Part shown: piece after piece, positions 2,959 through 41,004 of the stretch
Position numbering within the stretch: position 1 is the stretch's first letter
Layout of the letters: each line of letters begins with the position of its first letter
Assembly: GCF_001194135.2 (NCBI RefSeq)
Contig: NC_068982.1
Span: 117,220,692 to 117,284,691 of the forward strand
Length of the DNA stretch: 64,000 nt
Reading direction: 5' to 3'
Source of the DNA: Octopus bimaculoides
Lineage: Eukaryota
Notes under the pieces: model-generated
The model's database searches: none
What the model saw: the letters and a program-made list of their open reading frames with translations, nothing else
What the model was told of the DNA's origin: nothing
Program-made: the position numbers and the translations under genes

Positions 2959-2993
<35 letters not shown>

Positions 2994-3005: not shown

Positions 3006-3220
3006 AGGCAGCGAGATGGCAGAATCGTAGCAAGCTGGCTAAAATGCTTAGTGGCATTTCACCCGCCTTTAAAATCTGAATTCAAATTCCACAGAATTTG
3101 ATTCTTCTTTTCATCCTTCGAAGTCGAAAAATAAGCTGCAGTTGAGCACTGGATCGGTATCATTGACTTACTCTGTCCTCCGAAAATGCTGGCCTTGTGC
3201 CAATATTTGAACCCATTATT
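3006..3220 (+). mobile_element. tRNA-derived SINE, family A (MetaSINE-like)
   Basis: Head ggcagcgagatggcagaatcg (A-box-like) and gaattcaaattcc (B-box-like). Central ttttcatccttcgaagtcgaaaaataagctgcag resembles the Meta domain (CCTTCCATCCTTCCGAGGTCGGTAAAATGAGTACCCAG, recalled). Tail ggccttgtgccaatatttgaacccattatt is shared with other copies in the window. Confidence 0.85.
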
Positions 3221-4639
3221 CCGTTTGAACAGTGCATTACATATGTTGGTGGATACTACTTTATTTTATGCTGAATGGGGAGTCTCAGTTAATACCACAG
3301 GATCTTGAAACGATTTTCTTTCCACAGTTCGTCTCTGAGAAACGCATAGCACCTCTAATACTCATATTTTCGATCCGTTCGCTCGAAAAGAGACGAATAT
3401 ATCGATAAACCTGCGCAAAAACTGTTTAGCGATTCATTGTTTTTCCTTTGTCGCGGGAAAGTCTCACAGTGACACATGCCAGGGTAAAGCAAAAGGGTTA
3501 AAATGATTTGTGTGTGATATACAGAAATTGAGACATAGTAGAAGAGTGTATTTAGAGATAGATTGTGGTGAAAGGTATGATATTTTTGTGAGTAAGGTTA
3601 CAGTGTGTTCGGCCATCAAAAACGTGACGTTTTTGGATCTATGCAAGAATTAAAATGTACGTAACAATAATTTCAATGCAAATGGTAGTTTTATATATAC
3701 CGAGAAAATATGTTACCACATTTGTAAGGGGCATATTTTATATCATATGATTTCTCATGAAATGATTTATAATCGATGTCGTGTCTGTATTTTAGTTTGT
3801 TAAACGCTACTACGACATCGTACTAATCTATGAAAGACACACGCATACACATTGATACACATACACTAACACGGAAACACACACTCACACACGAATAAAA
3901 ACAGTCATTTCTCTCTTTCTCTCTCTATCTCTCTCTCACACAAACACTCACATACGCATAAAAACAGTTACCTCTCTCTCTCACACACACATATACATAC
4001 ACACACACACTGACACATACACATACCGACCCCACACACAGACTGATCACAATTTCATAGTTTATTTTGTGCTGAAATTTAAACGTCTGACAAGTATTCC
4101 TTTTCATCCGTCTTTCATAATTTACCGTAAACAACTAAAACTCTATCGTAAAAGGATTATTGTATTGAAGCTGCAACGATAAATCATAAACATTTCGTTG
4201 CACAACCATTAGATAGATGCTGAGTTTTAACTCTACGCTCTGTTTGACTTATCACTAATATGTATAAGCAAACTGAAATAAAAGTCAAACATCGCTAGGT
4301 TTCTACTGAATTGTTTGTGAAAATAAAAGAAAATATTAATACAGCTTGTGTCAAACATTACCGATAATCATTGATATTGGTATGTAGCTTGATTAATAAT
4401 TATGTATAAATGACTTCTTCTCGTAATTATCGACACATATAAATGAAGGTATTTCTATCGTCGAAGACATTATGATCTGTTGATACCTGTTTGGTGATAG
4501 GATTAATGGAAATGGTGTGGTTTTATTCTTTAGTGGGTAACACGTATTACTTTTGACATCATCAACTATTTTCGAATTCAAAGAATTCTGTTGCAATACA
4601 AGCTGCTAATTTCGTTGGTATGAATGAAACAAATTACCA

Positions 4640-6310: not shown

Positions 6311-9300
6311 CTTGAGAGATCCTTGCCTCTGCAATAAAGAGTACAAAGCTGGAATCTATGAAATGATATCATTTGTTCGAAACGGAAATAACACAATCAG
6401 AAAGCTGTTAAAACAATGTTTCAGACTAAATTCTACAGGATGTGGTCAATTTAGGACAAGTGCAGAGATAAAACTTGATTTTCTAATTTCGAGTGAAGGA
6501 ATTAGTTCGAAACTTCATAATTTTCTCCTACGCAGATTTCGTTCCACACAATTTCCGCCTACAAAATTTCAGTGTGAAGTTTTTGGTCAACGTAAGACTA
6601 ATTCATAGAAGACAATTGTGCTAGGTATCAAGATTAAATACATAAATCACGTTCTTGAAATGTGAAATTCTTTAGTAAATATACTAAACGTCAAATAAAG
6701 CATGTATTACAGTTCATACGTTGGAATTATTTTGTCTTGGGTTTCATTATTATTTTTGAAAGACTTTTATGCTAGCATCCAAACATATTTATTCTAGAAA
6801 GCTTACAGCTCGACCATAGTATTTAAACATTCCTAACTGGTATAACTGATATACGTATCTTTTGTGTCGACATCGATTACATAACAATTTTCTTTTGATT
6901 TTTGATTAAACATAAAGGGATCTATGAAAAAGGTTTCAAAGAAGGCAGTCGGATTCAGCTAATCGTGGATTGACTGATTGGAGTCATCATTATTTCTTTA
7001 CAATGTGTGCTAGACTCTGTCAGTATCACAGTGTCTACTAACTTACTTTATTTACGTTAAAAAGTAATGGAAACTTTGTCTATTACTAAAAACTGCACAC
7101 TTTCAACTCTTAATGAACATATTAGCTTTTACTTCTCTGAAACATAAGTATTATAAAAATATATGGAAACTATGGAGCAGTCGTTAGATCTAGTAACATG
7201 ATCTAGTATCAATTTTTGAACATATGTTTCTAACCAAAAATCCTATAGTTTTTAACCCAATGAAAGTAATTTTGAGATGTCCGAATTCTCGATGACATTC
7301 TTCAATATAATAAATTCTCTTATAAGATTTATATATTTCTATTTTATGTATTTGTATACTATATATTCCGAAAGAAAAATCAAATTCTGCAGAGTCTGCA
7401 AGAGTTTGGCAGTAAAAATTCAATAAATTATACAATTTCATGCTATGAAAAGTCGAAATGAAAGTCATAATCATATAAAATAAAAGTATAAATCTAATAT
7501 TGTGCCACTTCGAAATACTTTTCTTAATAAATGAATAAATGAAATAAGACATAATCAAAAACAAGAAATAGTCTATTAAGTATTATGTAGATTTCCAAAA
7601 TCATTTTTCCTAAACTTAGAACAAGCGTATTCTTTTATTGAAGTACGAAAAACAGAAGAAATGACGTTCATTCTATTCTCTACAAGAGCACTAGATTATG
7701 CTAGAAATCTATTCTCATCAAACGCATTGTGTTAGAAATAGATTGTGCTAGAAATCAAAACCTGTTTCTCCTGCTTGGTTCAGAGTGAGAGGAGAGTGTA
7801 CCTCTTACGGTGATGTATTGCACTGATCACATATGAAACTTGGCTTAAAATCTGACGGAAAGATTATACTGAATCATTCTTTTAAGTACTGTTTATCTGT
7901 CAGATATAACAACTTCAAATTGTTACTGCTAATTATAATAGCTGCCAAAAATGAAATGACGATCGTTCTATTAAACAAAATTACATAAAAACATTTCAGA
8001 AAAATGTTATTAGAAAATGTGTTGCAAAAACAAAAAGAGAATGTATTTATTAAATACGATTTGATAAAAGGCTTCGTCATAGCGTAACACTCGAGGCAGT
8101 ATTGATCATCTTTAAGAAAAACGAAAAACAAACAACTTCAATTGTTTTTTTTTTACGCCATTGTAATTGTGAGGCGTGGGTTCAACTCTTATTTCCATTC
8201 ATTGAAGATGTGCGATAATAAAAGGTTGCCATTACACTCTTACATATTTTGTAACGAACCCTATGATTAACAAAGAGTTGACTTATAAAATCTCCCGGAA
8301 CATCAATGATAAGTTAATACGCTGTCAGTATTATGATATTAGTCAGTGATCGGAATATCATATAATACTTACAATGCTTTCATAGATGTTCATCTGCATG
8401 AGATAAAAAACAAAAGCAAACAGAAAAAAAATAGCAACAAACAAGCATACAAATGGTGTATCAGGGAGAATAATGCAGATATCAGCGTACATAAAATAAC
8501 AGACTATCATAAAAGGGACAGTCTCACGTTTATGAGACAAATCTGGAAGTTTGAAAATAGAGTTAAAAGCTGAGACTACGTTGTTAGGGCTTATACATAA
8601 ATGCTAATCCATAAAGCCCAGAGGAGATGGAGAAGTCAGTACTCTAAGAGCGATTTAGTGGTATTGCATCCAATAATGTTATCGACTAGATGTGGGCCAT
8701 TGAATGATAAATGATTTTGTTACGGTTATTGCGATTCTGAAAAAGAAAGCCAAAACTAGCTTTCCTGTGTGGTACTATAACGTAATCAGGATAGTGGCAG
8801 AATTATAATAGAACAATACCGGAAACGTATACGGCAATATGCCAATGGCCAACATATAATTTCTTTTTCTCGTTTCCTATGTTGCGAACGAAAGCCATGA
8901 CCCATGGTGCACTGTGTTTATGGGCAAAGAATAATTTTACAAGCTCGTTTCCTAGGCTCTAAAGAAGTTAACTGCAGTAGAAAAAACATCGATGTTTTAA
9001 ACAATATAAGCTCCGGATAAAAGCTTCATCTTGTATTCCTGGTCTCATATTTTTTATCGTTCACATGTGTAAAAAGCAAACCTACTTTAGTTTATGTCTT
9101 CACCGCATCATAGGAGTTCCAACACAAGTAAACTCATCTGGAGTTTCATGTCACAAGCCGTTTAAATTGCTCTAAGACGAAATTAGAACATCTGAAGAGG
9201 AAAAACTCAATCGATTCATTGACTGAAAAGAGCTTTCTATCCTAGTAATATATATTACTCATGTAGCTATCAATATTTAAAAGTTTCTCGTTTGATTTCT

Positions 9301-10344
9301 TTAGTAAGTTAGGAAAAGCTAAGCATAATCAATAACGCATCGAACTAACTCCAATGAGTCTTGTTAACGGGAATTTTAGTCCACTGTCTCAGGGTAAGAT
9401 ATGATATATGTAAACCCACGTAGCAGACATACATACAGGGAAAGTTTGAATATCTCTCTGTATTTTTTATGTATGTATACATACCACAACGCGCATGCAT
9501 AAACAGGTACTCACATACATTTCTGAGGAAACATATGAACATTTGGGAGCGAAGTTAAAGCCGCAATGCATAGATATAACCAAAGGATGAATATAAGAAT
9601 CAGTTGCCTAGATTGCAGTACATGCATCTCTGTATCGCAACTTGAGGTTACAAGACATCTTTTTGGTAGAAGCCGTAGCAAACCTCCTATATAAGTGCTG
9701 TGTCGACGACCCCAGGCGAAGAAGTAGGATCTCCCAAGACATATAATTAGAGGTAGTATGGCCATGTTAGGTGTGTTGAGTAGCAGTCGAGTAGCAGTTG
9801 TGTAGCCTTTGCGTAGAGATCATCCGAAGGTGCTAGATAGCAGTAGCTTGATACATAACAATAAGCTTATTTTCAATGGTAATGTATATAAATATCAATT
9901 ATTGCCTGAAAGTCTTGATATTCTCGTTCAATAAAATCTGAGCGAGTTGTTTGTGTCTAGAATTAATTCTCAGTGCAGAAATATGCTTAAATAATATTTT
10001 TGCTCAGCAGTTGATATGTCCTGAACGACGAAAATGAGCTTTGGGTTCCTGGCACTCTTTCAGAGTTGAGCAACCAACAATGCATTACTGAGCTTCGTCT
10101 ACATTTCATTTAATCCTCACGAGGAATCATTGTGATACACCAACGCTGGCCCTTTGAACTGACTGCGTATAAGGTTCATCTGGCTTGTTGCTGCATTACT
10201 TTCGCTACGTGTCCACTTTCATTTACAAGGTGTTAGATGACCCAATATTAAGTTAAACTCTAGCTTAGTGTAACAAGAGAGTAATAAACGAGAGAGCTTC
10301 ATGGTTGCAATGTAAAATTTTTATTAATTTAACCATGTTTGCGT

Positions 10345-10600
10345 TGCAGAGGTGAAATGATTCAATAAGGTGACCACTACCTGGTCAGCTAACCTGCTAG
10401 AAATAGTAGCAATATCTATCCCGAATCACGCCCTAGTTTTTGTTTTTTTTTGTTATAAAGAAAGGGCATACTGGGACTTTTAGTCCGAGATTAATTACTG
10501 CTGAAAGGATACAGCAGAATGTCCTTCATGATAATATGCCTTCTCGATCAGAGCTGACATGGGACTAACCACAAGACGACAATGACAACCATTAACTCTG
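10345..10600 (+). mobile_element. Interspersed repeat, probable 3' half of a further SINE family
   Basis: ctacctggtcagctaacctgctagaaatagtagcaatatct...gatcagagctgacatgggactaaccacaagacgacaatgacaac with a degenerate CAA-like tail. A short diverged inverse match lies at about 47262-47295. The family assignment is from recall only. Confidence 0.45.
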
Positions 10601-13029
10601 TATCTAAAGTAACGGATATTTAAAACTACCAAAACAAATGTGCTGAAAGTTTAACGAACAGCACATTCTAATTGGCGTCTCTTAAATCATAGGTTTTAAT
10701 TTTTCATCAATGTTCATAACGAGTCTCTTAAAGGTTATAACCTTCGATTTCTTTCCAAACATTTAGAATCTTAATCTATTTAGCTAAATTAGCTGCTTCT
10801 AAGCTCCCTTTATCAACTTATTATTTATCTATAGGCTGCTATGTGTCCTTGTGCGACCTATGAAATTACCTACTAGAATGACTGAACGATAAAAAGGATT
10901 TCCGAACAATTTTCCGTTCTCACTACTATATCAACTCACACATGGTGATCTTTAATGACTGGCCAATGCTGTGTTACTTCTGATTCAACATATTGATCAA
11001 TATAACTCACTCCGAGTCACAAGAAACAGCTAAACGAGTGACCTGCACCATTTACAAAAATCACGATATTTCATCTGTTACTTCATTCAACCCACAGCTA
11101 TCAGAGGGGGCTAAGTGAGAGACCGATACCATCTACATAACACAAGCAGCATTCAATTGATTCCTGAGCAGTTTAAAATCATCTGTAGAATATCGCATAG
11201 TAGTAGTCTCAACTTGAGAGCTGCATAATAATACTGGAAACTGTAAAAGTGCTTTTTTTTGTTTTGTACATTGCGCAAGGTTTACTACCTCTTATAAGCT
11301 CTCTTGCACCAGGAATCTATCTAGCAGACTGTTATTAGACATTTTGGTTTATCCCTCTATATTTAAAATAAAAATTCCCTAGCGTTGGACATTGTTTTTC
11401 TACCTCTCAAAAAGTCATGACAATAAATATAAATATATGACAATCTGAACTCAATCGACGATAAAATTTAATCTACGGAGATTTTCCTTATGGTAAATCA
11501 AATGAAATCTCTTCCATTTACTTCACTCAGCCACTTCCTGTCTATTTCGCCCTACACATATACATACAGACTTACAAATACATGCAAAAAGATAATTCAT
11601 AGATATACACAATCACATTTACGCACACACACAGACAAACACACAAATACACACAAACACACATACACAGATAGACACATTCACATTAACGTATGTATCT
11701 ATATATATATATGTGTGTGTATATACGTACATAATCTTTCTCTATTTGACATCTTAAGTAGATATTTTTGTCTAAACATGTAATCAGATCCGAAACGGAT
11801 GTATCTAACTTGACAGGAATATTAAATTCTGAAACATTTACTTCAGTATATTTTCAGACACTAAACAATGGAAACAAGATTTTGAGAATAACTCCTAGTT
11901 TACATCTATCTGGCTTCCGACAAATCATATATATATATATATATATANNNNNNNNNNNNNNNNNNNNNNNNNNNNNNNNNNNNNNNNNNNNNNNNNNNNN
12001 NNNNNNNNNNNNNNNNNNNNNNNNNNNNNNNNNNNNNNNNNNNNNNNNNNNNNNNNNNNNNNNNNNNNNNNNNNNNNNNNNNNNNNNNNNNNNNNNNNNN
12101 NNNNNNNNNNNNNNNNNNNNNNNNNNNNNNNNNNNNNNNNNNNNNNNNNNNNNNNNNNNNNNNNNNNNNNNNNNNNNNNNNNNNNNNNNNNNNNNNNNNN
12201 NNNNNNNNNNNNNNNNNNNNNNNNNNNNNNNNNNNNNNNNNNNNNNNNNNNNNNNNNNNNNNNNNNNNNNNNNNNNNNNNNNNNNNNNNNNNNNNNNNNN
12301 NNNNNNNNNNNNNNNNNNNNNNAGAGAGAGAGAGAGAGATGCGTTTATTGAGGACAGCTTTTCCTTTGCCCATGTATTAAAATCATTACTTTAATCGAGA
12401 TCTTTCCATTTCATTAAATTTGTTTTTCACATTTTTGCATGATTCTCCACCAAATTGTTTAGAGCAGTAAATTTCCCAATCCCATCATCCGAAGAAATTT
12501 ATATTTCACTCTGTTTCTTTGCCTATTGACTTGGTCATCATGACTGATGTTGATATCGTTATTGAAATTTGAGTCTTGTGTTTTAGAATTTTCCTCTTTG
12601 ATTTCGATGTTTATTTGTTGTTTTTGCACAATGTATGTAGTCTAATGTAGTTATTTTTTTTATTATAAATAAATTTATTATTATTATGCTGTACTAAAAA
12701 TGTTTGCTTCCGCTATTATAGAAGTGAAATGTTTAGTATATATTTGCATTAATTTCGTTAAACATATTAATGTTCTCAACCCTAATGCAAAAAAAAAAAA
12801 ACCAAAGCCAAAGAAGACAATAACAAAGCAAAAACAAAAAAACAAAAAAACAAAAAAAAGAAACACCACTCACACTCAAATACCTCCTTACCTTCTAAGA
12901 TACAGAAAATTACACTCGAAAATACTCGATAATATATTTCGAAACAAGAAGTATCGACCTGGAACGCCTTTGATTCTTAATCTGCTATCTGAGGAGTGAT
13001 CTGTGATTTAAAATAATAATCCTGAAACT

Positions 13030-16113: not shown

Positions 16114-17547
16114 ATATTAAAGAACGGCAGCTCCCCATTATGTCGTATATGCCAACAACAAAATGAGACCATCGATCATGTTGTCTCCATGTGCAGTCTG
16201 CTTGCGTCTACAGAGTATCTCAACGGGCATGATAGAGCTGCACAATATATTCACTGGGTAATATGCAAAAATATGGACTTGTCCCATGATAAGAACTGGT
16301 GGGAACACAAACCACCCCAGTACTTGAAAATGATCACATCGCACTCCTCTGGAACTTCACCATTCAAACTGACAGAAAGATAGACGCAAATAGGCCAGAC
16401 ATCACACTGAAAGACTTCAGACAAAAATCATGCCTCCTCATTGATATGACTGTCCCAATTGATATAAATGTATCTGTCAAGACCTACCAAAAACTGAGCA
16501 AATATAAAGATCTTGAAATAGAAATTAGCAAAATGTGGAATCTGAAGACTAAAACAATACCTATTGTCATAGGTGCCCTGGGAATGACAGCGAAACGGGC
16601 TAATTACTACCTAGCTCAGATACCAGGAAACCCCAAAATGGCTGAAGTTCAANNNNNNNNNNNNNNNNNNNNNNNNNNNNNNNNNNNNNNNNNNNNNNNN
16701 NNNNNNNNNNNNNNNNNNNNNNNNNNNNNNNNNNNNNNNNNNNNNNNNNNNNNNNNNNNNNNNNNNNNNNNNNNNNNNNNNNNNNNNNNNNNNNNNNNNN
16801 NNNNNNNNNNNNNNNNNNNNNNNNNNNNNNNNNNNNNNNNNNNNNNNNNNNNNNNNNNNNNNNNNNNNNNNNNNNNNNNNNNNNNNNNNNNNNNNNNNNN
16901 NNNNNNNNNNNNNNNNNNNNNNNNNNNNNNNNNNNNNNNNNNNNNNNNNNNNNNNNNNNNNNNNNNNNNNNNNNNNNNNNNNNNNNNNNNNNNNNNNNNN
17001 NNNNNNNNNNNNNNNNNNNNNNNNNNNNNNNNNNNNNNNNNNNNNNNNNNNNNNNNNNNNNNNNNNNNNNNNNNNNNNNNNNNNNNNNNNNNNNNNNNNN
17101 NNNNNNNNNNNNNNNNNNNNNNNNNNNNNNNNNNNNNNNNNNNNNNNNNNNNNNNNNNNNNNNNNNNNNNNNNNNNNNNNNNNNNNNNNNNNNNNNNNNN
17201 NNNNNNNNNNNNNNNNNNNNNNNNNNNNNNNNNNNNNNNNNNNNNNNNNNNNNNNNNNNNNNNNNNNNNNNNNNNNNNNNNNNNNNNNNNNNNNNNNNNN
17301 NNNNNNNNNNNNNNNNNNNNNNNNNNNNNNNNNNNNNNNNNNNNNNNNNNNNNNNNNNNNNNNNNNNNNNNNNNNNNNNNNNNNNNNNNNNNNNNNNNNN
17401 NNNNNNNNNNNNNNNNNNNNNNNNNNNNNNNNNNNNNNNNNNCCCTAGGCATAACACCTACATGAACTTCTAACTTGTTGTCTCTTGAGGTCTCTGGGTG
17501 AGACTTGGATCCAACTTGTACAAATGCAAAACAAAAGTCAAACATAA
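16114..17547 (+). mobile_element. Younger R4/Dong-type element: CCHC plus RLE, N-gap, 3' UTR
   Basis: CRICQQQNETIDHVVSMC, HDRAAQYIHWVICK, LWNFTIQTDRKIDANRPDI, LLIDMTVP, KLSKYKDL, IPIVIGALG, with one frameshift near 16320. The 3' UTR after the gap runs into (TAA)n. Confidence 0.95.
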
Positions 17548-17644: not shown

Positions 17645-17717
<73 letters not shown>

Positions 17718-17721
17718 TAAT
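17548..17721. repeat. (TAA)n tail/target tract
   Basis: Visible directly. Confidence 0.98.
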
Positions 17722-18740
17722 ATGCGACTGAACGTGACAGCGGCTGGACGTGTTCTTCGCTGCTCTGACCTGTCAGCAGCTGAAGACACAGAAACAGTAA
17801 TACAACCTAGCAGGACAACTGAAAAATAACTCTAAAAGACTGCAATATCTACCGTTTCCTATGAGCATTTTGAATTTCCCTCAAAATAAGTTAAGGAACA
17901 GCTTTCGAACACATAAATAATCAGCTTTAAAACCTTTAATATCTACACCTGTGAATACCTATCATTTCCTTCCCCACTGAGTATTCGAAAATGTAAACAT
18001 CCTCTTTATTCTCAGTATGTTGGAGAAGCAGGATACTGCTAATCCCTATATATTTATGATTATAAATGGCTTTACCGAAAAGGTTTTTTCATACTGACTT
18101 ACCCGGCAAAATTGTTAATTATTAATTTTATTACTAATTGACGATTCCCTGCCCTGTATATCTATATCTATATATATGTATGTATATGTTTATATATTAT
18201 TGTTTTTTTTCTGCCAATAATTACAAATAGAACATTTTGAATTGCTTCTTTTCAAGGCAACGCTCTCAGTGGCCACTGCTGATAGTAAACACATTTGACC
18301 TCTGCTAACCCAAAGGATGCGAAGATTCTTTTACCTCTATGGCTGACCTCTCCACCATCTGCCGAATCTATTTATAGACCTGTAGAATATGATCTATTCA
18401 CCAACCTACTATCTAACTATTTCCTCCAGCAACCACATATGTATGATGTCAAGTACAAGACAAAGGTTGAAAATAAATGGAAATAATAATAAGGATATTA
18501 ACAACGGTAGTGGTGGTGATGGTGATAATGATAAAAACAAATGATATGCTGCAGCAGCTAATACTAAATACTACTAATACTACAGTAATACTACAACTAC
18601 TACTATCATGATAGCAGAGGAATCTGAGACCCAAATACCACCCTTACCACTACCGCTGCTGTTGCTGCAATCACTACTGCTAATACATATAAACACAATA
18701 ATAGCAGTGATATCAGGGATGATAATGATAATAATGAAAA

Positions 18741-21217
18741 GAAACGGGTGGAGCCTACCCATAGGCTGATTAATGATGGTGCCACAATAAAAATACTGGC
18801 AATTGCACAAACTGATAATCTCTACCTCATATGAGTGACAATCAAAAAACAAAATAATGTGAATAACGGTGGTAATGAAACTGAAGCCAATGATGGTGAC
18901 AGTGCTACACCCGGTAGGCTCAGAGATTCTGGTCCGGCTCCAGCCTGTCGATATCCAGAAAGGGTCCACCACACACGGTGTAGATGGAGCAAGCAAATTA
19001 ATGCTGTGGTTATGGAGTGTTACTACCTGAGCAACTCAGTAGAGGAAAATGGTGCTCAAATTAGGGGTAACCGACAACGTATGTATGATCATTGGAGAGA
19101 AAAGGAATTGTTTCAACTCACAGAACAGAGACTATGTGATCAAGCTAGAACAATAAGAAAATTTGTTGGTTCACAGAAGTAGAGCTCGAAGCTATGAGAA
19201 GACGAGTCATGGAGACTACCAGCAGAGATAACGATGAAAATACAGTTCTTACTCATAAGAGTAATCTCATAGTACAGGAAAGGAACTGTGATGGTTTACT
19301 TGATGAGAAGCATATAGATGATCTAAAAGAAGACAATAAAACTAATAGTGACATGACAGATGAACATCAGGCGATCTACGACAGAATAAAGGCAAGACTA
19401 CAAGAGACCGATAGCGACATTATTTGCAACCTTAAAAAGGTTGATCGATGGAAATTGAAGCAAGAAGCGAAACATGTCAATGACATTCTGAAATACATCA
19501 GAACAAACTACATTACAGAAACAAATAATTTGATCAAGGCAGCAAGTATTGTTGTAGCAGAAAACGTGGGTGTTGGTGTCAAGAAAAAGAAATAAAATGG
19601 GAGTGACAAAAGAAAAGATCCATGGTGGAAAAGAAGAATCCAGTAAGGGTTAGACATGCTCTCAAAGGAAATCTCTGTGTTAGACCGAAAAGAGAAAGGC
19701 GTGCTTAAAAGCGAACAAAAATACAGGGTGCTGAAAAGGAAGTATAATATTGAAAGAAAGAGCCTCAATTTCGTATTGGAGTAACCGAAACAGCGGCTCG
19801 TTGCAAAGAAAGCAAAGATGGTAAGATACGACCAAATAATGAAGGGTTACCACCAGAATAGACTATTCAGAGTAGATCAGAAGAGATTCTATAAAGAAAT
19901 AAATGGGGAGTGAACAAATGAAAAGTTGATACCAGATAACATTGAAAGTCAAATGTTTTGGAGTGACATCTGGAGCAAAGACACGGAACACAAGAAGGAT
20001 GCTGAATGATTGCAAGAACTGAAACAAACGGTAGTCTTTCCAAAACAGCAGAACTAATTATTTCAGGTTAGGAAAGTAAAGGAAATTAGCGAAAACATGA
20101 GCAACTGGAAGGCTCAGGGAACAGATGATGTTCGTAATGCGTATAATATGATCTCACATTCTTGGATTATGTAGTGTATGAACCTCTTTGGTATTGCCTC
20201 GATGTTGAACGATTGCTTGGAAAAAGTACGGCGTATTGGAGGACGGACATACTAGTTTAGCAAAGAAGATTGGGGACAGTAGAAATTAGGAGGGGCATCT
20301 TCCATGAGGACTGGATTTTTGCACTGTGTTTGATACCACTAACACTGATTGTGAGGAAAGAAAAAGCTGGGTATGTATTCAAAGGCCGCCAACAAAAAGT
20401 CAACCATTTGTTATTCATGGGATGACCTCAAACTTTATGGTAAAGATGAAGCCCTAGTCAATTCCCTCGTTCATACGGTGTATACATTCAGTGCTGATAT
20501 AAGAATGGAGTTCGGACGGAGAAAGTGTGGTGTGTTAATATTGAAGCGAGGCAAAATCAAATGTATGGACGGGCTGACGATACCGTCGTGGGAGGAGATT
20601 CTGAAGCAGATAGAAGAAACGGGCTATAAGTACTTGGGGATTTAGGAAATGAATAAATTGATGGAGAAAGAAATGACAGAACAATTTAAGGAGGAATACT
20701 TGCGCAGACTGAGACTGATACTTAAGTCGTAATTAAACGGACGGAATAAGATCGAAGCTATCAACACCTGGGTGGTTTCACTCCTTAGATATGGAGCAGA
20801 GGTTATCGCATGGACAGTAGACGAAATAAACAGCTTAGACAGAAAGACAAGGACGTTTCTAACTAGATATCGAATAAGAGAGACACATAATTTGAGATCA
20901 TTGATGCAGCCATACCAAATGACACGAATCCTGTGACTAAGGATGTTGAAAAAACCACCAAGTGCTCCGAACTGAAAGTGGAAATGGCAAGACTGTATGG
21001 AATGCGAGAAGGTAATGTAAAAGTGATACCAGTGGTGATTGGAGCGTTAGGCTCAAACCCATTGAAACTTCAAGACTTCTTAAGCAAGTGGAAATCCCAT
21101 GCAAAATTGATTGGGCACAGCGCTCATTTTAAGGGAAGTATTATCTGTCTGAGGTCCTTGTGACATGACAGATGGCTCAAGACTACGGTGCATTTTTACC
21201 TACACTGTGTTACAAAG

Positions 21218-21219
<2 letters not shown>
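18741..21219 (+). mobile_element. R4/Dong-type element retaining both ends, with two internal deletions
   Basis: N-terminal RWSKQINAVVMECYYLS..RQRMYDHW..TEQRLCDQARTIRK, then [89 protein letters not shown], and the RLE end IIDAAIPND..VIPVVIGALG. A short 3' UTR runs into (TAA)n at 21220-21293. Many stops. Confidence 0.93.
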
Positions 21220-21293
<74 letters not shown>

Positions 21294-22330
21294 TGAAGAC
21301 CTCACATTCGGTTGTGTTAGATGATGAGACAGTAGGGAAATTGAAAACATCACTTTCTTTTTTGTTAAATGCTGACACGGTTATAAAAGAACTCAAGCAG
21401 GAACAAACTTACAAATAACTCTGAATAAATGAGGGCTCTGGCATTCAGCATTCAAGCATAGCAGAAAAATTAGAAAGGAATTTTACAGGAGCATTCGCGC
21501 TCTCTCAAAATCCGAGTTAAATGCGCGTAACAAGGTGTTAGCTATAAATTTCTTAGCAGTTCCAGTTGTTATTTACAATTTCAATGTGTTGAATTGGAAT
21601 ATGAGCGAAATAAGGAAGGTTGACAGGAAAATACATAAGCTGCTGACTTGCAATAAGATGCACTTCCAAAAGACTGATGCAGATCATTTTTAACTTCCAA
21701 AAACAAGACCAAAACTGGTGCTTAGAGAGCTCAGTAATTCCGATCACGAACAGCCAACGAAAGAGACGAACCCCACTCCACATGAAATTATATGGTTAGT
21801 TCCACCGTGAAAGTAATAATTCAAGAAAACAGGAAGCATCATGAAAATGGCTCAACATGGGTGACCTTAAAAAGAATATAGAAAGGCTAATCGTCGCGGC
21901 CCAGGATCAGGCTTTGAATACTAACTCAGTGGAGAAGCATTTATACTACAAAAGTGCAACGAATCTCTGCCGAATGTGTGGGAAGAGGGTCGAAAGCGTG
22001 ACTCATATTGTTAGTGCTTGTGAAAGTCTTGCGCAGAATGAGTACAAGCGCAGACACGACAAGGTAGCCCAAAACCTCCACTGGCTACTTTGCCGGAAGT
22101 AAGGATACTTGTCCAGACTGACAAAATTTTGAAGCACCGAAGGCCGGATGTAGTCACCTTTAGGATTGGCAAACAAGAATGCCTAATAATTGACGTGGCA
22201 ATGCCAGGAGATCAACTTATCATGAAAGAAAGAGAAAAGATCGATAAATGTGCAGACCTGAGAAGTGAGATCGCTAAAATGTGGCGGCTATGAAAGTTAA
22301 AAATAGAGGTTGTTCTATTGTCATCAGAAG
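21294..22330 (+). mobile_element. R4/Dong-type element(s): RT thumb joined to CCHC and RLE
   Basis: KSELNARNKVLAINFLAVPVVIYNFNVLNW..VDRKIHKLLT, then GDLKKNIERLIVAAQDQALNTN, CRMCGKRVESVTHIVSAC, RHDKVAQNLHWLLC, QTDKILKHRRPDV, LIIDVAMPGD. Starts immediately after the TAA tail of the previous copy; TAA tract follows at about 22358-22403. Confidence 0.9.
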
Positions 22331-22403
22331 TAAAGTTATAATGAAAAGAAAGCATATATAATAATAATAATAATAACAATAATAATAATAATAATAATAA
22401 TAA

Positions 22404-22626: not shown

Positions 22627-22908
22627 NNNNNNNNNNNNNNNNNNNNNNNNNNNNNNNNNNNNNNNNNNNNNNNNNNNNNNNNNNNNNNNNNNNNNNNNNN
22701 NNNNNNNNNNNNNNNNNNNNNNNNNNNNNNNNNNNNNNNNNNNNNNNNNNNNNNNNNNNNNNNNNNNNNNNNNNNNNNNNNNNNNNNNNNNNNNNNNNNN
22801 NNNNNNNNNNNNNNNNNNNNNNNNNNNNNNNNNNNNNNNNNNNNNNNNNNNNNNNNNNNNNNNNNNNNNNNNNNNNNNNNNNNNNNNNNNNNNNNNNNNN
22901 NNNNNNNN

Positions 22909-23413
22909 AATTGATTGGAAGTGTTATCATGTACTTGTTTTGTTTTAGTATAAAAGATTGGCTACAGCAAATATTCTGCTCAATACCGCAGATTTGCTTG
23001 TCAGTTGTTTGACCTTAACCAGTTGAGCATGTTCCTTGGTGGCTGACGATATGCGCATCTCTGATCACGAGCAGAAGTAGTGGGGGAGCATGATAGCCTT
23101 GTGCTGAGAGGAATTCTTTGGGGTTTGAATAATTCACCTTTGGAAACATGGGTGTTTTGCTCAACATCCTTAAATAAGCCTTATTCAGGGACCTTTTGAG
23201 CGGGATGGGCTACTCGACCTGAAGAAAATTCTAACTGGGACCCAGCTGCGACGTCATGCGCTGTTTACCTTGATATGAGATCACCATGTCGCGCACATAT
23301 GGTTGTGATGCATGTGCCTGGTGTATCCTTATCAGACGTGCAATCATGATGGGTATAATGGAATTCGTATATTTTACCCTAGTGTAACTTTGATGGCATG
23401 CACTGCTCTGTCA

Positions 23414-23418
<5 letters not shown>
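22909..23418 (+). mobile_element. Non-coding ~540-bp interspersed element, copy 1 (5' end lost in gap)
   Basis: Colinear along its whole length with 24095-24633; ends gcatgcactgctctgtcacac followed by (TAA)n. Confidence 0.85.
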
Positions 23419-23483
<65 letters not shown>

Positions 23484-23770
23484 CGTATTAACTGGAACGA
23501 CTCAATCGTGTTAACTGGAACGACTCATGTACTGAGAAGAGCATTATCGCTGTGAAAACCACATCCATTCATGAATTCTTTTTATTTATTTATTACTTTA
23601 TTTATTTTTTATTTTTAAATACATATTTTGCATGTGAATTTGAGTGTGTAAATTGGGAATGCATACAATGAGTTTCTCTGCCCTAGGTGTACGGAAAACA
23701 CTCGGCGAGTAATGGAAGAAAATTTGAAGAAAGAAGAAAAAAAAAACATAATAATAATAATAATAATAAT

Positions 23771-23939
23771 CCTTTCTACTTTGTTCACATTGTTTGAAAC
23801 TTTTGGAGAATCAGCTAAGCGATTACGTCGTCCCCAGTGTTTCACTAGTGCTTATTTTTTCGATGCCGAAAGGATGAAAGGTAAAATGGACCTCGGAGCA
23901 TTTTCTTCAGGGTGCTAACGATTCTACCATATCGCCGCT
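23771..23939 (-). mobile_element. SINE family A copy embedded in TAA tracts
   Basis: Reverse complement: agcggcgatatggtagaatcgttagcacc...cgaggtccattttacctttcatcctttcggcatcgaaaaaataagcactag...ctggggacga. TAA repeats on both sides. Confidence 0.82.
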
Positions 23940-23940
23940 C

Positions 23941-23971
<31 letters not shown>

Positions 23972-24007
23972 TTGATGTTGATGAAAATAATAATAATAAT
24001 AATAATG

Positions 24008-24080
<73 letters not shown>

Positions 24081-24094
24081 TGATGATGATGATG

Positions 24095-24633
24095 TAAAAA
24101 TAGGCAGTGGCTCTCATGGCTTCTGATCTGAACTGACTGGAAGTGTTATCATGTACATTTTTTTTGTCTCGGTATAAAAGATGGGCTATATTAAATATCC
24201 TGCTCAATACCACAGATTTGCTTGTTGTGTGACTTTAACCAGTTGAGCATGTACCTTGTAGGCTGACGATATGTGCATCTCTGAAAACGAGCAGAAGTAT
24301 TGAGGGTGCATCATAGCCATGTGTTGAGAATAATTCTTTGGGTTTTGAATAATTCACATTTGGAAACAAAGGTATTTCGTCCATCATCCTTAAACAAACT
24401 TTATTCAGGGACCTGATGGGATGGGATACTCAACCCGAAGAAAATTCTAACTGGGCCCGAACTGCAACGTCATGTGCTGTTTATCGGGATATAAGATCAC
24501 CATGTCGTACACATGTGGTTGTGATGCATATGCCCGGTATACCCTTATCAGACGAGTGGTCATGATGTGTATATTGGGCTTCGTATAATTGTAACCCAGT
24601 GTCATTTTGATGGCATGCACTGCTCTCCCACTC
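24095..24633 (+). mobile_element. Non-coding ~540-bp interspersed element, copy 2 (apparently complete)
   Basis: Begins taaaaataggcagtggctctcatggc after a TAA/TGA tract (23940-24094) and ends gcatgcactgctctcccactc before (TAA)n at 24634-24666. Homologous to 22909-23418. Confidence 0.85.
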
Positions 24634-24666
<33 letters not shown>

Positions 24667-24809: not shown

Positions 24810-25433
24810 TAGGTTGCTCAAAAGGTCTTTCCGTCGTCAGTATTTTATTGCAAAATAAATATTTGTAAGATGGTATAAGACTACAAATGAATATATTAGA
24901 CTTTACAAGACTTTAAAAAAACTTTACAAGAAGTGCTGAAAGTGTGTCGTCCTTCATTTTCAATACATAACATTTAATTTCTTTTTTACTGCCGTGTGAG
25001 CACTTCCTAGGCTGATTTCCGTTTCCTGTAACAATTTACATAAGGACTTTGACGGTCTTGCTAACAGTTTATCAGAAATATGGGGGTGTTTCGTCTGATC
25101 GAAGCGTAGGCCTTTCTCTTGTTGCTGCGTCTTCCACTGAGATTGTGTTTCTAAAGTTTCTTATCAAATCCCACACATTGTAATGATGTGGAACAACAGT
25201 ATTTGAAAAAGTTTCACTGAACTTCTGTTTCACAGTATACGCGCATTTATTTCCAGCTCGAAACACCCATTCAACTAAAAACGTAATTTCTTCAATGGTT
25301 AGCATGTCGACATGCTGGAGGGTACACAATGACTGAGCGACAATGGCTGACACCCAGCCGCCCACGCAGTGATAGCCAAATTGCGCATGCCCAGGATGAA
25401 AAATTTCACTGCGGCGAGACTTTTTGAATCCTG
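24810..25433 (-). mobile_element. Internally deleted Tc1/mariner transposon (DUF4817-type N-terminal HTH)
   Basis: Minus strand: MLTIEEITFLVEWVFRAG..TVKQKFSETFSNTVVPH..VWDLIRNFRNTISVEDAATRERP, then KSLCKLLQETEISLGSAHTAVKKKL, jumping to a C-terminal CIENEGRH relic. Degenerate TIRs caggattcaaaaagtctcgccg / taggttgctcaaaaggtctttccg with TA on both sides. Confidence 0.82.
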
Positions 25434-25489
25434 TATAGGAATATGTATGTACGAAATTCCTCGTTATTTTAAATACGCTATTCACAGCA

Positions 25490-25665
25490 TTTCTTCTTCT
25501 TCTTCTTCTTCTTCTTCTTCCTGTTCTTCTTCTTCTTCTTCTTCTTCTTCTTCTTCTTCTTCTTCTTCTTCTTCTTCTTCTTCTTCTTCTTCTTCTTCTT
25601 TTTCTTCTTCTTCTTCTTCTTCTTCTTCTTCTTCTTCTTCTTCTTCTTCTTCTTCTTCTTCCTCC
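25490..25665. repeat. (TTC)n microsatellite
   Basis: Visible directly; source of the poly-S/poly-E ORFs. Confidence 0.98.
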
Positions 25666-28490: not shown

Positions 28491-28854
28491 TATGAATATA
28501 AACAAATTACAGAAGACTTCCATCAATTTGAGATAAAAACGATCAAAACCAACTAAGTTTGCTCACTCATAAAACCAGTACATGTACACCGCCAGCTAAT
28601 TGATTAAAATAAAGGCGGGATCTATACCAGTAATATCGGTGCGCCCAGCAAACCGTGACGTTTAAGCTCCTTGAGGATTGGTCAAAGTCGTATTCGAAAA
28701 ATCCAGTTTGCTGGAGCTTTATAAGAGGTATAATTAGGAAGAAGTCAATCATTTTACTACAGTTGTCAAAAACTCAACTCTCAGTTAAATACATTTTGAA
28801 ATCTGATAATTACTACGAACGTATGAAAGCACAAACTGAACTTTATGAACATTA

Positions 28855-29285
28855 CAAAATGTTATAAAAGATTTAGAACCCGAGGAGAGCTACAAATACC
28901 TAGAGATGCTTGAAGGGGACGGAATCAGACATTCAGTGATGAAGGAAAGGATAAGAAGAGAATGTTATCGCAGAGTGAGAGCAATACTTAAGACAGAGCT
29001 GAATGCAAGAAACAGGATTGAAGCGATCAATGCATTAGCCATACCAGTCGTGACTTACAATTTCAATATCATTAACTGGTCAATTACTGAAATATGTAAT
29101 CTTGAGAGAAAAAAATACGAAAACTGCATAGAATGCGCGAATCTAAGGCAGATATAGAACGACTTTATCTGCCAAGAAAAGAGAATAGCTGTGGAGATTT
29201 ACAACTGGCATTAACAATGAGGGATTGCCACAATTGATCTAGACACCTGCATGAAAACCTCTGAGGACTGGATGTTAAAACTTAA
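28855..29285 (+). mobile_element. R4/Dong-type RT C-terminal fragment
   Basis: VIKDLEPEESYKYLEMLEGDGIRHSVMKERIRRECYRRVRAILKTELNARNRIEAINALAIPVVTYNFNIINW..KADIERLYLPRK. Confidence 0.9.
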
Positions 29286-29634
29286 CTCAAACACACACAC
29301 ACACATATTCGGCAACGAACGGACGTCCCGTCCTTTTTGTGGGACTTTCCTATTCAAGTGAACAAGTATTTAGAAAATAATAGGATAGGTCGAACATAAA
29401 AATTATAGATAAGGAGAAGCGAAGTTATTTACTAATCGACCCATCACGCCCGTTTGACTCCAGGATCGAAAAGAAAGAGAATGAAAATAAAAAATTCAGA
29501 ACCCGTAAAATTTGAAATAGGAAGAATTTGGAGTATGAGAACTGAAAAGTTGTGGATAACTAAAGTTAGAGTAATGACCCACCACTCACATAAATCCTAC
29601 CAGAAATAAAACCGAATCTGAGTCATTTAAAAAA

Positions 29635-29846
29635 TAACAAAGGTTCCAAGTTTTGACACAAGGCCAGCCACCTCAGAGGAGTGGGTAAGTAGATTAAATC
29701 GACCCAGCACCGAACTGCAACGTATTTTATTGAGCAAGAAAGGATGAAAAGCAAAGTCGACCGCAGCGGAACTTAAAATATAAAGACGGATGAACCGCTA
29801 CTCTTTTTGCCCGGCGTTCTAACAATTATGCCGGTTTTCTGCCTTA
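29635..29846 (-). mobile_element. SINE family A copy
   Basis: Reverse complement contains ggtcgacttt gcttttcatcctttc and ggccttgtgtcaaaacttggaacc. The head abuts the TAA tract. Confidence 0.8.
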
Positions 29847-30100
<254 letters not shown>

Positions 30101-30434: not shown

Positions 30435-30745
30435 TTCAGTTTCTGGCACAAATTCAGCAATTCCAAGGGAGGGGTAAGTGAAGTGCGAAGAAAAATGGAC
30501 CTTGGTGTCATTTAAACTCAGAGAGTAAAGTCGCAAGAAATGTCTGTGTCGATCTTGTCCGGCGCGGTAGTGCCGCCTTGAGGAAATTTAACATTGGTTT
30601 CAAACTTTGGAACAAGGTCAGCTATTTCGGAGGAGGGGGCAAATCTATTACATCGACAACAGTGTTCGACTAGTACCCGGAAAGCATTAAAGGCAAAGTC
30701 GACCTCTGGAGAATTTGAACTCAGAACTTGAACATTACGATACAA
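30435..30745 (-). mobile_element. Two tandem SINE family A copies
   Basis: Two successive tail-to-head series (ggcacaaattcagcaa... and ggaacaaggtcagc...aaggcaaagtcgacctctggagaatttgaactcagaac), the second with a clear B-box complement. Confidence 0.75.
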
Positions 30746-32169: not shown

Positions 32170-32580
32170 CTAGACGTCGAAACTGGCGGAATTGTTACCG
32201 CACTGGGAAAAATACTCAGCAGCGTATCTTCCGAATTATTGTTCTGAGATCTAATGCCATTCATCATTTAGAATTCATAAAACAAGTACCAGGTGAACAG
32301 TGGGGCTGATGTAATTGGCTTACCCTTCCCCCGAAATTACTGGCCTTGTGCCAAATTTTGAAACCAATATTGTGGCGATCTAACATCCGCGACGGGCAAA
32401 ATGCATAGCAGTATTCCGTCCATCTTAACTTTCTGTGTTTAAAATCCCGCAAGTCGACTTTGGCTTCCATCCTTTTGAGATCGTTAAAATAAGTACCTGT
32501 TGAGCACTAGAGTCGATTCAATATATGTGCCTCTCACTCGAGCTTGCTATCCTTGTCCAAGAATTTGAAACGTATATTAT
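32170..32580 (+). mobile_element. Two tandem SINE family A copies
   Basis: The first ends ggccttgtgccaaattttgaaaccaatatt (about 32370) and is followed at once by gtggcgatct...aagtcgactttggcttccatccttttgagatcgttaaaataagtacc. Confidence 0.8.
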
Positions 32581-40279: not shown

Positions 40280-41004
40280 AGCAAGCCACCGAAAACGAGA
40301 ACCCGCATTGGCAGATAGTCTTCTGCAGTGACAAGGCAGCAGCACTGGCAGGCTAAGGAAACTGAGGACCAGAGGTCTTGTAGAGTGTTGAAACGAGCTG
40401 CCGCTGCTAGAGCTGTAAGGACCGCAGAAAATTCACAAAAGAGTGCTATCCGTCGGGCACACACTTCACTTGAAAGTTGGCTGTCCTGTCATCGTCCTTC
40501 GCTATGTCAATGCATCTACATTATGCAACGGAACACGGGTCGTGTTCCAGCAGATGATAGGAACGTCATTGAAGCTGGTGTACTTCCAGCCAGCTCCACG
40601 CAAACATCTACGACTTCAGTGTCTTCAACAATCAAAGCCTTCAAAAACTGTATCCACCACAATACTTGGTGCTTCCTCCAAGACCGTCGACTACATGGCT
40701 AAATCCTTCACTAATACATCAGCATGATTTTCATGTTAACTCTGTAGCTACTGCTTCGACACACGGACGCGGGACGGTGCAGGATGGCGTGAGAAGGTCC
40801 AAAAAAGTTTACATCCTAATGGATGGTGTGGACTGGGCACCATTGGTCTGAATAGCTAAAAATTCGAATACAAGGTAATCATCTCCAACTTTCATTGTCC
40901 GTTACCGGCAGACATGATCGTTTTCAATCTTTCAAGATAGCTCACTACCGACTGTCGTTATACGCAGAGGGGCAACTCTCTGCTTGGAATAAGACTCATG
41001 CTAG
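40280..41004 (+). mobile_element. Miniature, decayed Helitron relic
   Basis: GHTLHLKVGCPVIVLRYVNASTLCNGTR (40443-40541) plus frameshifted DRNVIEA match the Pif1-type helicase C-terminus of Helitron RepHel proteins. Upstream ETEDQRSCRVLKRAAAARAVRTAE resembles N-terminal STPR-like repeats. Candidate 3' hairpin at 40964-40983 and CTAG|T at 41001-41005. Boundaries uncertain. Confidence 0.75.

What the first reader, a model, noticed from the sequence alone, without database searches (positions are those of the whole stretch)
22909..24666. A ~540-bp non-coding element with no tRNA head that lives in TAA tracts: candidate R4/Dong passenger
Seen: two colinear copies (22909-23418 and 24095-24633, roughly 80% or more alike by eye). 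Both end at the same point (..gcatgcactgctct..cac[a/t]c) followed by (TAA)n, lie in the same orientation as the R4-type elements and sit inside their cluster. There is no RT-like ORF, no TIR, no convincing B box, and no match to the four R4 3' UTRs in the window. The ends have weak complementarity (ggcagtg 24103-24109 with cactgct 24618-24624), and a short stem tgtcat-tttg-atggca precedes the tail. Established: SINEs mobilised by RLE-clade elements are rare (for example R2-derived SIDEs). Inference: a non-autonomous retroposon using the R4/Dong machinery, of unknown promoter type and origin. It may already be in repeat libraries under an uninformative name.
Basis: partly seen in the sequence, partly recalled or inferred. 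Interest (0 to 1): 0.7.

Follow-up and report, generated by a model that had tools for sequence, protein, structure and literature searches.

The report
Non-coding repeat living in TAA microsatellites
Two diverged copies of a ~0.5-kb non-coding repeat each sit inside a TAA microsatellite next to Dong/R4-type retrotransposon remnants; it is most likely an ordinary non-autonomous hitch-hiker of those elements, which could not be proven from two copies.

Summary
Copy 1 (22909-23418) and copy 2 (~24095-24633) align colinearly at 83-84% identity (K2P 0.18). They end at the same column and are followed by pure (TAA)21 and (TAA)10. Copy 2 also has a (TAA)23(TGA)5 tract upstream. Copy 1's 5' end is lost in a 282-N assembly gap, so it is not an element boundary.

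The element has no ORF, Pfam domain, tRNA, Rfam family or known ribozyme. It resembles nothing else in the window. T8 and T4 runs on the sense strand argue against a pol III SINE. Unlike two of the R4-like LINE remnants nearby, which carry endonuclease coding sequence to within ~20-60 nt of their TAA tails, it holds no R4 coding remnant in its last 540 nt.

A second, unrelated non-coding family in the window also ends in (TAA)n. So TAA-tailed non-autonomous retroposons already exist in this genome.

Best reading (about 0.55): a non-autonomous retroposon copied in trans by Dong/R4 machinery into TAA tracts. Main rival (about 0.3): 5'-truncated copies of a long 3' UTR from an autonomous LINE not sampled here. 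No partner LINE, promoter or 5' ribozyme was identified. No other copies could be retrieved from any public collection available.

Modest interest; probably already sits in repeat libraries under an uninformative name.

The parts
22909..23418 (+). Copy 1 of the non-coding element; its 5' part is missing
   Evidence: Aligns with copy 2 at 83-84% identity. It begins right after the N gap.
22627..22908 (.). Assembly gap (282 N) that hides the 5' end of copy 1 and probably a TAA tract
   Evidence: The sequence before the gap ends ..ctgaataataata.
23419..23481 (+). (TAA)21 tail or target tract directly after copy 1
   Evidence: TRF 100% match.
23941..24094 (+). Compound (TAA)9..(TAA)6 TGA (TAA)23 (TGA)5 tract directly upstream of copy 2 (target tract and 5' junction)
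24095..24633 (+). Copy 2 of the element, the only one with a visible 5' junction. The true 5' end lies between 24079 and 24131.
24634..24666 (+). (TAA)10-11 tail after copy 2
24173..24180 (+). TATAAAAG box conserved in both copies (also at 22949-22956), with CTCAATA about 33 nt downstream. Function untested.
24158..24165 (+). T8 run on the sense strand (two T4 runs at the same place in copy 1). This is a pol III terminator-type signal inside the unit.
17715..21220 (+). R4/Dong-like LINE remnant 'R4a' (degenerate RT and C-terminal domain, ~60-nt 3' UTR, (TAA)24 tail). Candidate type of machinery donor.
21293..22358 (+). 5'-truncated R4/Dong-like LINE remnant 'R4b' (CCHC plus PD-(D/E)xK-type C-terminus, TAA tail)
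28850..29847 (+). R4-like remnant 'R4c'. Its last ~250 nt match the separate SINE-like TAA-tailed family. (TAA)21 tail.
23770..23942 (+). Unit U7, between the two copies: a 5'-truncated copy of the other TAA-tailed SINE-like family

Best explanation
The two sequences are old, independently inserted copies of one interspersed non-coding repeat family. The unit is about 0.54 kb and is GC-richer than its surroundings.

The family most likely spreads as RNA that a Dong/R4-type LINE protein copies in trans. In outline (inferred): the LINE's restriction-like endonuclease nicks the TTA strand of a TAA microsatellite. The (UAA)n 3' end of the RNA pairs with the nicked target. Reverse transcription is then primed from the target. 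This would leave the element inside the tract, always co-oriented with the TAA strand, with a fixed 3' end followed by (TAA)n.

Shown: the repeat exists, has no coding capacity, has a common 3' terminus plus TAA tail, sits between TAA tracts, shares the orientation of all R4-like units, and lacks R4 coding remnants.

Inferred: trans-mobilisation by Dong/R4 proteins, tail-based priming, and the source of the transcript. The transcript is unlikely to be a pol III product, because the sense strand has T8 and T4 runs. It would come either from read-through or co-transcription with 5' processing, as in R2, R4 and Dong, or from an unidentified pol II promoter.
For: Repeat and shared 3' end.

TAA on both sides of copy 2, and after copy 1. 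Chance estimate about 5e-7.

Unrelated flanks, so independent insertions.

No coding capacity: six-frame protein search empty; Pfam empty; substitutions show no codon periodicity, 30/27/22. The matching 64-codon open frames (stop to stop; 50 aa from the ATG) on the minus strand of both copies are only about 69% identical in protein at 84% DNA identity, so they are not under selection.

Not a truncated copy of the LINE types seen here: blastx against R4 C-terminal proteins gives only noise. The same search finds the endonuclease-domain coding sequence within the last 320 nt of R4a and R4b, leaving 3' UTRs of only ~20-60 nt. A near-intact relative in L003 has a 148-nt 3' UTR.

Length: copy 2 is <=555 nt between TAA tracts, and copy 1 is 510 to at most 792 nt given the 282-N gap. 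This fits a discrete short unit.

Precedent in the same window: an unrelated SINE-like family ends in (TAA)n in all three copies that keep a 3' end. One of them has no R4 coding sequence for 2.2 kb upstream.

The neighbours are RLE-type LINEs. Their homologues carry RVT_1. The C-terminus gives weak zf-RVT and VRR_NUC hits and a weak match to the R2 protein C-terminus.

Literature: Dong elements target TAA microsatellites, including in a mollusc (PMC3812793). R2 supports non-autonomous SIDEs (PMC3414825).
Against: Only two copies exist and one 5' end is invisible. The pattern expected of a defined family (a common 5' end, many copies, 5' truncations) is therefore not shown.

No LINE in the window shares the element's 5' or 3' end. 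If Dong/R4 reverse transcriptases are stringent like R2, a partner with the same 3' UTR should exist, and none was found.

No promoter and no 5' ribozyme could be demonstrated.

Predicted RNA structure is not consistently stable: z = -3.4 for copy 2 and +0.2 for copy 1.

The source genome could not be searched.
Confidence: 0.55

Rival explanations
1. The two copies are 5'-truncated insertions of an autonomous TAA-tailed LINE (a Dong/R4 family not otherwise present in the window) that has an unusually long (>=540 nt) non-coding 3' UTR. They would be dead-on-arrival fragments of the LINE itself, not a separate parasite.
For: 5'-truncated R4-like copies are common in the same cluster: R4b is 1.07 kb, and there are short units of 173-267 nt. 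A fixed 3' end plus TAA tail is exactly what truncated LINE copies show. With one 5' end in a gap, similar lengths cannot be proven. Other RLE LINEs such as R2 can have 3' UTRs of several hundred nt (general knowledge, not tested here).
Against: Two of the R4-like 3' ends here (R4a, R4b) have UTRs of ~20-60 nt, and the L003 relative has 148 nt; R4c's last ~250 nt are non-coding but match the other SINE-like family. No coding remnant was detected in 540 nt. Both copies fall in the narrow 0.51-0.79 kb range. The element is not similar to any LINE 3' end in the window.
Confidence: 0.3
2. A SIDE-like derivative. An internally deleted Dong/R4 element keeps only the parent's 5' self-cleaving HDV-like ribozyme and its 3' UTR. 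It has no promoter, is co-transcribed with whatever lies upstream, and is cut out by its own ribozyme. This is a special case of the best explanation.
For: Dong and R4 carry active HDV-like ribozymes at their exact 5' ends, and R2 SIDEs consist of ribozyme plus 3' UTR (PMC3774820, PMC3414825). The size (~0.5 kb), the lack of a recognisable promoter and the residence at the parent's target site all fit.
Against: No Rfam ribozyme model matches the 5' region even at E<=10. My structural descriptor finds HDV-like nestings, but also does so in 98% of shuffled sequences, so it carries no weight. There is no similarity to the 5' or 3' end of any R4-like copy in the window.
Confidence: 0.15
3. It is not a mobile family of its own. 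It would be retro-copies of a cellular or lncRNA transcript that happened to end in a UAA repeat, or a local duplication whose edges coincide with TAA tracts through microsatellite-mediated recombination.
For: A neighbouring unit (23482-23748) ends in an A10-like run before its TAA tract. That looks like a retro-copied polyadenylated transcript and suggests promiscuous template use. Both copies lie only 1.2 kb apart.
Against: A K2P of 0.18 between copies with completely unrelated flanks fits two independent old insertions of a family better than a local duplication. No similarity to any known RNA gene.
Confidence: 0.1

Closest known systems
R2 SIDEs (Short Internally Deleted Elements) of Drosophila (Eickbush & Eickbush 2012, PMC3414825)
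   Same: A short non-coding element found only at the target site of a site-specific RLE-type LINE. It has no promoter of its own that can be recognised and is presumed to be copied in trans by target-primed reverse transcription.
   Different: SIDEs demonstrably share the 5' ribozyme and 3' UTR of a co-resident R2. Here no ribozyme and no shared end with any R4/Dong copy could be shown. The target is a TAA microsatellite, not the 28S gene.
Dong / R4-clade LINEs (Bombyx Dong, DongAg, DongBg; PMC3812793, PMC3774820)
   Same: Insertion inside (TAA)n, the sense strand colinear with TAA, and a 3' end followed by TAA repeats. Degenerate members of this kind flank the element.
   Different: The element has no ORF, no RT or endonuclease remnant, and no sequence similarity to the LINE copies present.
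The other TAA-tailed SINE-like family in the same window (2994-3260 minus strand, 23770-23942, 29560-29847)
   Same: Non-coding, ends in (TAA)n, sits in TAA tracts in the same orientation rule, and is presumably moved by the same machinery.
   Different: Unrelated sequence, a shorter unit (~250 nt) and more copies in the window.
Classical tRNA/5S/7SL-derived SINEs with LINE-derived tails
   Same: Short, non-autonomous, and dependent on a LINE for retroposition.
   Different: No pol III head, T8 and T4 runs inside the unit, and no tail shared with a LINE in the window.

Membership tests
Pol III-type SINE | 5' head derived from tRNA, 5S, 7SL or snRNA with an internal promoter | tested here: not met
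   ARAGORN found none. Rfam gave no relevant hit at gathering score or at E<=10 on small slices.
Pol III-type SINE | Transcription unit free of strong pol III terminators (T>=4-5 runs) before its 3' end | tested here: not met
   T8 at 24158 in copy 2, two T4 runs at the same place in copy 1, and further T4 runs.
Pol III-type SINE | 3' tail shared with a partner LINE | tested here: inconclusive
   No similarity to any LINE 3' end in the window, but only three or four LINE families are sampled here.
SIDE-like (internally deleted RLE-LINE derivative) | Self-cleaving (HDV-like) ribozyme at the exact 5' end | tested here: inconclusive
   No Rfam ribozyme hit. The structural descriptor is non-specific, with hits in 98% of shuffles. 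Only one copy shows the 5' end.
SIDE-like (internally deleted RLE-LINE derivative) | 5' and 3' ends identical or similar to those of a co-resident autonomous element | tested here: not met
   Local alignments to the R4a, R4b and R4c ends score within the shuffle range. The test is limited to LINE copies in this window.
SIDE-like (internally deleted RLE-LINE derivative) | Inserted at the parent LINE's specific target site | tested here: met
   Copy 2 lies between (TAA)23(TGA)5 and (TAA)10. Copy 1 is followed by (TAA)21 and preceded by a gap that opens with a TAA run.
5'-truncated Dong/R4 LINE copy | Colinear with the 3' part of an autonomous element, with coding remnants upstream of a short UTR | tested here: not met
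   blastx against R4 C-terminal proteins gives only noise, while the control R4a and R4b ends hit at 1e-9 to 1e-55. Pfam found none. A family with a UTR of 540 nt or more is not excluded.
TAA-tract-specific (Dong-type) retroposon, autonomous or not | Fixed 3' end followed by (TAA)n, with the sense strand co-oriented with the TAA strand of the tract | tested here: met
   Both copies meet this. Every TAA-tailed unit seen in the window obeys the same orientation rule.
TAA-tract-specific (Dong-type) retroposon, autonomous or not | Many dispersed copies with variable 5' truncation and TAA flanks genome-wide | not testable with these tools
   The source genome is not in any searchable collection. 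The six-frame protein search, the metagenome, genome and viral k-mer scans, and two LINE protein searches found no same-species sequence.
DNA transposon / MITE or LTR | Terminal inverted repeats or direct long terminal repeats with target-site duplications | tested here: not met
   The repeat finder reports no inverted repeat joining the element's ends. Only a 7-nt complementarity exists.

The most novel reading that the evidence does not exclude
The element is a promoter-less, ribozyme-processed SIDE-like parasite of a Dong/R4 LINE that lives only in TAA microsatellites. This would be the first SIDE-type element outside the Drosophila R2/R1 system. Together with the co-resident TAA-tailed SINE-like family, it would suggest that Dong/R4 reverse transcriptases accept unrelated RNAs that merely end in (UAA)n. 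That would be relaxed, tail-based template choice in an RLE-clade LINE, analogous to L1 and poly(A).
Probability: 0.12. Interest if true: 0.55.

Novelty: new member of a known kind. Interest (0 to 1): 0.3.

Why it matters
If confirmed genome-wide, the family would add a non-autonomous partner for the poorly studied Dong/R4 clade. Non-autonomous partners of restriction-like-endonuclease LINEs have so far been documented mainly as R2 SIDEs.

Several unrelated 3' ends share only a (TAA)n tail within one tract cluster. This offers a simple natural test of whether these reverse transcriptases recognise a specific 3' UTR or just the microsatellite tail.

It also bears on annotation. Such units fill and lengthen TAA microsatellites, break short-read assemblies there (the gap at 22627-22908), and are easily labelled 'Unknown' or 'Unclassified SINE'. 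None of this changes current understanding of retroposition unless the ribozyme or the relaxed-template idea is borne out.

Tried and rejected
1. More copies. I ran a six-frame translation of copy 2 as one protein query against 5.8 billion proteins and got no hit. A 21-mer scan of JGI metagenome contigs gave two hits that are chance matches in an unrelated, fungal-looking gene. A 24-mer scan of GTDB genome contigs and IMG/VR gave nothing. An nhmmer profile of the two copies found nothing else in the window or the fetched loci.

2. Source species. Two R4 protein searches gave best identities of 52-67%, and cluster look-ups carried no names. I fetched L003 (ENA ERZ25066843) and L004 (a 'jellyfish metagenome'). 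They carry a related, nearly intact R4-like LINE with TAA tails, but not the element. I recalled that two abundant repeats here look like octopus repeats, but could not verify this. Literal sequence searches of the paper library failed.

3. Ribozyme. Rfam at permissive thresholds gave nothing. My own HDV-like descriptor hit, but it also hit 98% and 89% of shuffles, so I rejected it as evidence.

4. Shared ends with LINEs or short units: scores were within the shuffle range.

5. Conserved RNA structure. With two sequences there is only one compensatory pair, and the fold z-scores disagree between copies.

6. Coding potential: none.

7. The bacterial promoter/terminator scan is irrelevant for a eukaryotic sequence and was ignored.

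8. The supplement of the O. vulgaris repeat paper holds no consensus library.

Full report
What is there. The window is eukaryotic DNA with about 33% G+C. It is full of microsatellites and assembly gaps and has no tRNA or Rfam-recognisable RNA gene. Between 17.5 and 24.7 kb lies a train of units that all end in (TAA)n on the + strand. The finding concerns two of them. Copy 1 (22909-23418) and copy 2 (about 24095-24633) align colinearly. MAFFT gives 87% mean column identity. BLAST gives 83% over 518 nt, E=1e-151. My count is 84.4% over 507 columns, with 46 transitions, 33 transversions and K2P 0.176. Both copies stop at the same alignment column (..GATGGCATGCACTGCTCT plus 7 nt) and run directly into pure (TAA)21 and (TAA)10. 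Sequence outside the element is unrelated on both sides, so these are two insertions and not a tandem duplication. Given 14 (TAA)>=5 tracts in the window, two sequences both ending at a tract by chance has a probability of about 5e-7.

Corrections. Copy 1 starts at 22909 only because a 282-N gap ends there. The last bases before the gap (..ctgaataataata) already open a TAA run. So copy 1 is between 510 and at most about 790 nt long, and its 5' junction is unknown. Copy 2 is the only copy with a visible 5' junction: (TAA)23 (TGA)5 TG TAAAAATA GGCAGTGG.. The end of the element lies somewhere in 24079-24131. Only two copies exist in the window, even with an nhmmer profile. The 7-nt complementarity of the ends cannot be checked in copy 1.

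What it is not. There is no coding capacity. All six frames are interrupted. A six-frame query found no protein among 5.8 billion. Pfam finds nothing at E<=1. The 79 substitutions show no codon periodicity, 30/27/22. Both copies keep a 64-codon open frame (stop to stop; 50 aa from the ATG) on the minus strand, but the two proteins are only about 69% identical at 84% DNA identity, which is neutral decay. There is no tRNA, no Rfam family and no known self-cleaving ribozyme, even at E<=10 on slices of 270-2300 nt. There are no terminal inverted repeats. A T8 run at 24158 (two T4 runs in copy 1) and further T4 runs lie on the sense strand. A pol III transcript would be expected to terminate within the first 70 nt, so this is not a classical SINE.

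The neighbours. Units at 17715-21220, 21293-22358 and about 28850-29847, plus a minus-strand fragment at 2466-2960, are degenerate LINEs. They have an RT followed by a CCHC motif and a PD-(D/E)xK-type C-terminal domain. Their relatives in public data carry Pfam RVT_1. The C-terminal region gives sub-threshold zf-RVT and VRR_NUC hits. A close relative's C-terminus weakly matches the C-terminal endonuclease region of solved R2 proteins, E=0.011. With their (TAA)n tails they fit the Dong/R4 kind. Dong elements are known to target TAA microsatellites in a moth, a mosquito and a snail (PMC3812793). In every case the coding strand is colinear with the TAA strand of the tract. This includes the minus-strand fragment, which abuts (TTA)11. 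I did not place them phylogenetically.

Truncated LINE or separate element? In R4a and R4b the endonuclease-domain coding sequence is found by blastx within the last 320 nt, which leaves 3' UTRs of about 60 and 20 nt. The same search on the 540-bp element gives only noise. A nearly intact relative fetched from an ENA assembly (L003) has a 148-nt 3' UTR before its TAA tail. The element also shows no similarity to the 5' or 3' ends of any LINE or short unit in the window; scores are within the range of shuffled controls. Both copies fall in a narrow length range (<=555 nt, and 510-790 nt). These points favour a discrete non-coding unit over 5'-truncated copies of the LINE types seen here. They do not exclude a LINE family with a 3' UTR of 540 nt or more that happens not to be in this window. 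With two copies and one hidden 5' end, that rival keeps about 0.3.

A precedent in the same window. While checking the other TAA-ended units I found a second, unrelated non-coding family. Its core is TGGTTTCAAATTTTGGCACAAGGCCAGC..GAAAGGATGAAAGGCAAAGTCGACC.. and it ends ..GTGCTAACGATTCTGCCA.CTCGCCGCCTT. It has copies at 2994-3260 (minus), 23770-23942, 29560-29847, and tail-less fragments at 30440-30720 and 32180-32480. All three copies that keep their 3' end are followed by (TAA)n. The minus-strand copy has no R4 coding sequence for 2.2 kb upstream. So TAA-tailed non-autonomous retroposons already exist in this genome. The 540-bp element is not related to this family.

How it most likely works. 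Shown: a repeat family, non-coding, with a fixed 3' end and TAA tail, inside TAA tracts, and co-oriented with the tract. Inferred from the known biology of RLE-type LINEs: an RNA ending in (UAA)n is used in trans by a Dong/R4 protein. That protein nicks the TTA strand of a TAA tract and primes reverse transcription there. Each insertion regenerates TAA tracts on both sides, which explains the train of nested units. The 3' ends of the nine units in the cluster share nothing but the tail. This suggests either many LINE families with private 3' UTRs or tail-based, relaxed template choice; I cannot tell which.

The source of the transcript is open. Dong and R4 themselves have no promoter. They are cut out of co-transcripts by an HDV-like ribozyme at their exact 5' end, and R2 SIDEs keep just that ribozyme plus the 3' UTR (PMC3774820, PMC3414825). 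I tested this idea. Rfam models find nothing. A structural descriptor I wrote does find HDV-like nestings at the 5' end of copy 2 and of R4a, but it also does so in 98% and 89% of shuffled sequences, so the test is uninformative. A TATAAAAG box with CTCAATA about 33 nt downstream is conserved in both copies. A start there would lose the first ~100 nt of the unit, so it cannot by itself sustain the family. Predicted RNA folding is unusually stable for copy 2 (z=-3.4) but not for copy 1 (z=+0.2). With two sequences there is one compensatory pair, so there is no case for a conserved structure.

External evidence. I could not obtain any further copy. The metagenome k-mer scan gave two chance hits in an unrelated gene. 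The genome and viral scans gave none. LINE protein searches reached only 52-67% identity, so the source species is not represented. From memory, two abundant repeats in the window look like octopus repeats. Octopus genomes are reported to hold many Dong-R4 LINEs and hundreds of unclassified SINE families (PMC13282606, PMC9115989). I could not verify the species, so this remains a lead only.

Verdict. This is a real but ordinary repeat family. It is most likely (about 0.55, including a SIDE-like variant at about 0.15) a non-autonomous passenger of Dong/R4-type machinery living in TAA microsatellites. The alternative is the long 3' UTR of an unsampled LINE (about 0.3). It is a new member of a known kind, and interest is modest unless the ribozyme or the relaxed-template reading is confirmed by the genome-wide and bench tests listed.

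Noticed in passing
window 2994-3260 (-), 23770-23942 (+), 29560-29847 (+); tail-less fragments 30440-30720 (+), 32180-32480 (-): A second, unrelated SINE-like non-coding family ending ..GCTAACGATTCTGCCA.CTCGCCGCCTT. It is followed by (TAA)n in all three copies that keep a 3' end. In 29560-29847 it forms the tail of an R4-like remnant, so it is either a LINE/SINE pair sharing a tail or a nested insertion. ARAGORN found no tRNA head, and Rfam found none in the one copy searched (2950-3450).
   Followed up: partly
window 17.5-24.7 kb, 2466-2993, 28.8-29.9 kb: Every TAA-tailed unit (the R4-like LINE remnants, the short units, both copies of the element and the minus-strand R4 fragment next to (TTA)11) is co-oriented with the TAA strand of its tract. 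Units are stacked head-to-tail, separated only by TAA runs, as expected for repeated insertion into each other's tails.
   Followed up: partly
window 23482-23748: A short TAA-ended unit that begins with a 23-bp tandem duplication (AATCGTATTAACTGGAACGACTC x2) and ends in an A-rich run (..gaagaaaaaaaaaaca) just before (TAA)7. It looks like a retro-copied polyadenylated transcript and may indicate promiscuous template use or template switching.
   Followed up: no
window 17735-17790: The 5' region of the longest R4-like copy can be drawn as a compact HDV-like nested fold (P1 TGACAGC/CCTGTCA, P3 TCG/TGA, P2 GTGTT/GACAC, CTGAA before P2'). It starts 20 nt inside the element, and the descriptor also hits 89% of shuffles, so this is unproven.
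   Followed up: partly
L003 (ENA ERZ25066843 ctg2470, 8713-11596) and L004 (ENA ERZ941587, 'jellyfish metagenome'): Nearly intact R4/Dong-like LINEs with long ORFs, a 148-nt 3' UTR and TAA tails. They are 76% identical in DNA to the window fragment 2466-2904. L003 also shows dense TAA tracts holding short TAA-ended units, including one with an inverted 5' end (8400-8508).
   Followed up: partly
window 25491-25661 and 49379-49665: Long (TTC)57 and (TTC)95 tracts. An ORF next to the first (25072-25485, minus strand) gives a sub-threshold Pfam DUF4817 helix-turn-helix hit of the kind seen in transposases. I did not examine whether TTC-targeting elements sit here.
   Followed up: no
window 40419-40724 (+) and 45802-46474 (+): A Pif1 2B-domain fragment (Pfam E=6e-9), which suggests a Helitron-type helicase remnant. 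Also a transposase-like pair of ORFs that got no Pfam hit. I spotted no obvious host gene, but the window was not systematically annotated.
   Followed up: partly
window gaps 22627-22908, 16653-17442, 57434-57764 and others: Some of the 14 N gaps directly abut microsatellites. Examples are a TAA run before 22627, an AC-type repeat before 55812 and a TG repeat before 58908. Element boundaries next to such gaps are assembly artefacts.
   Followed up: no
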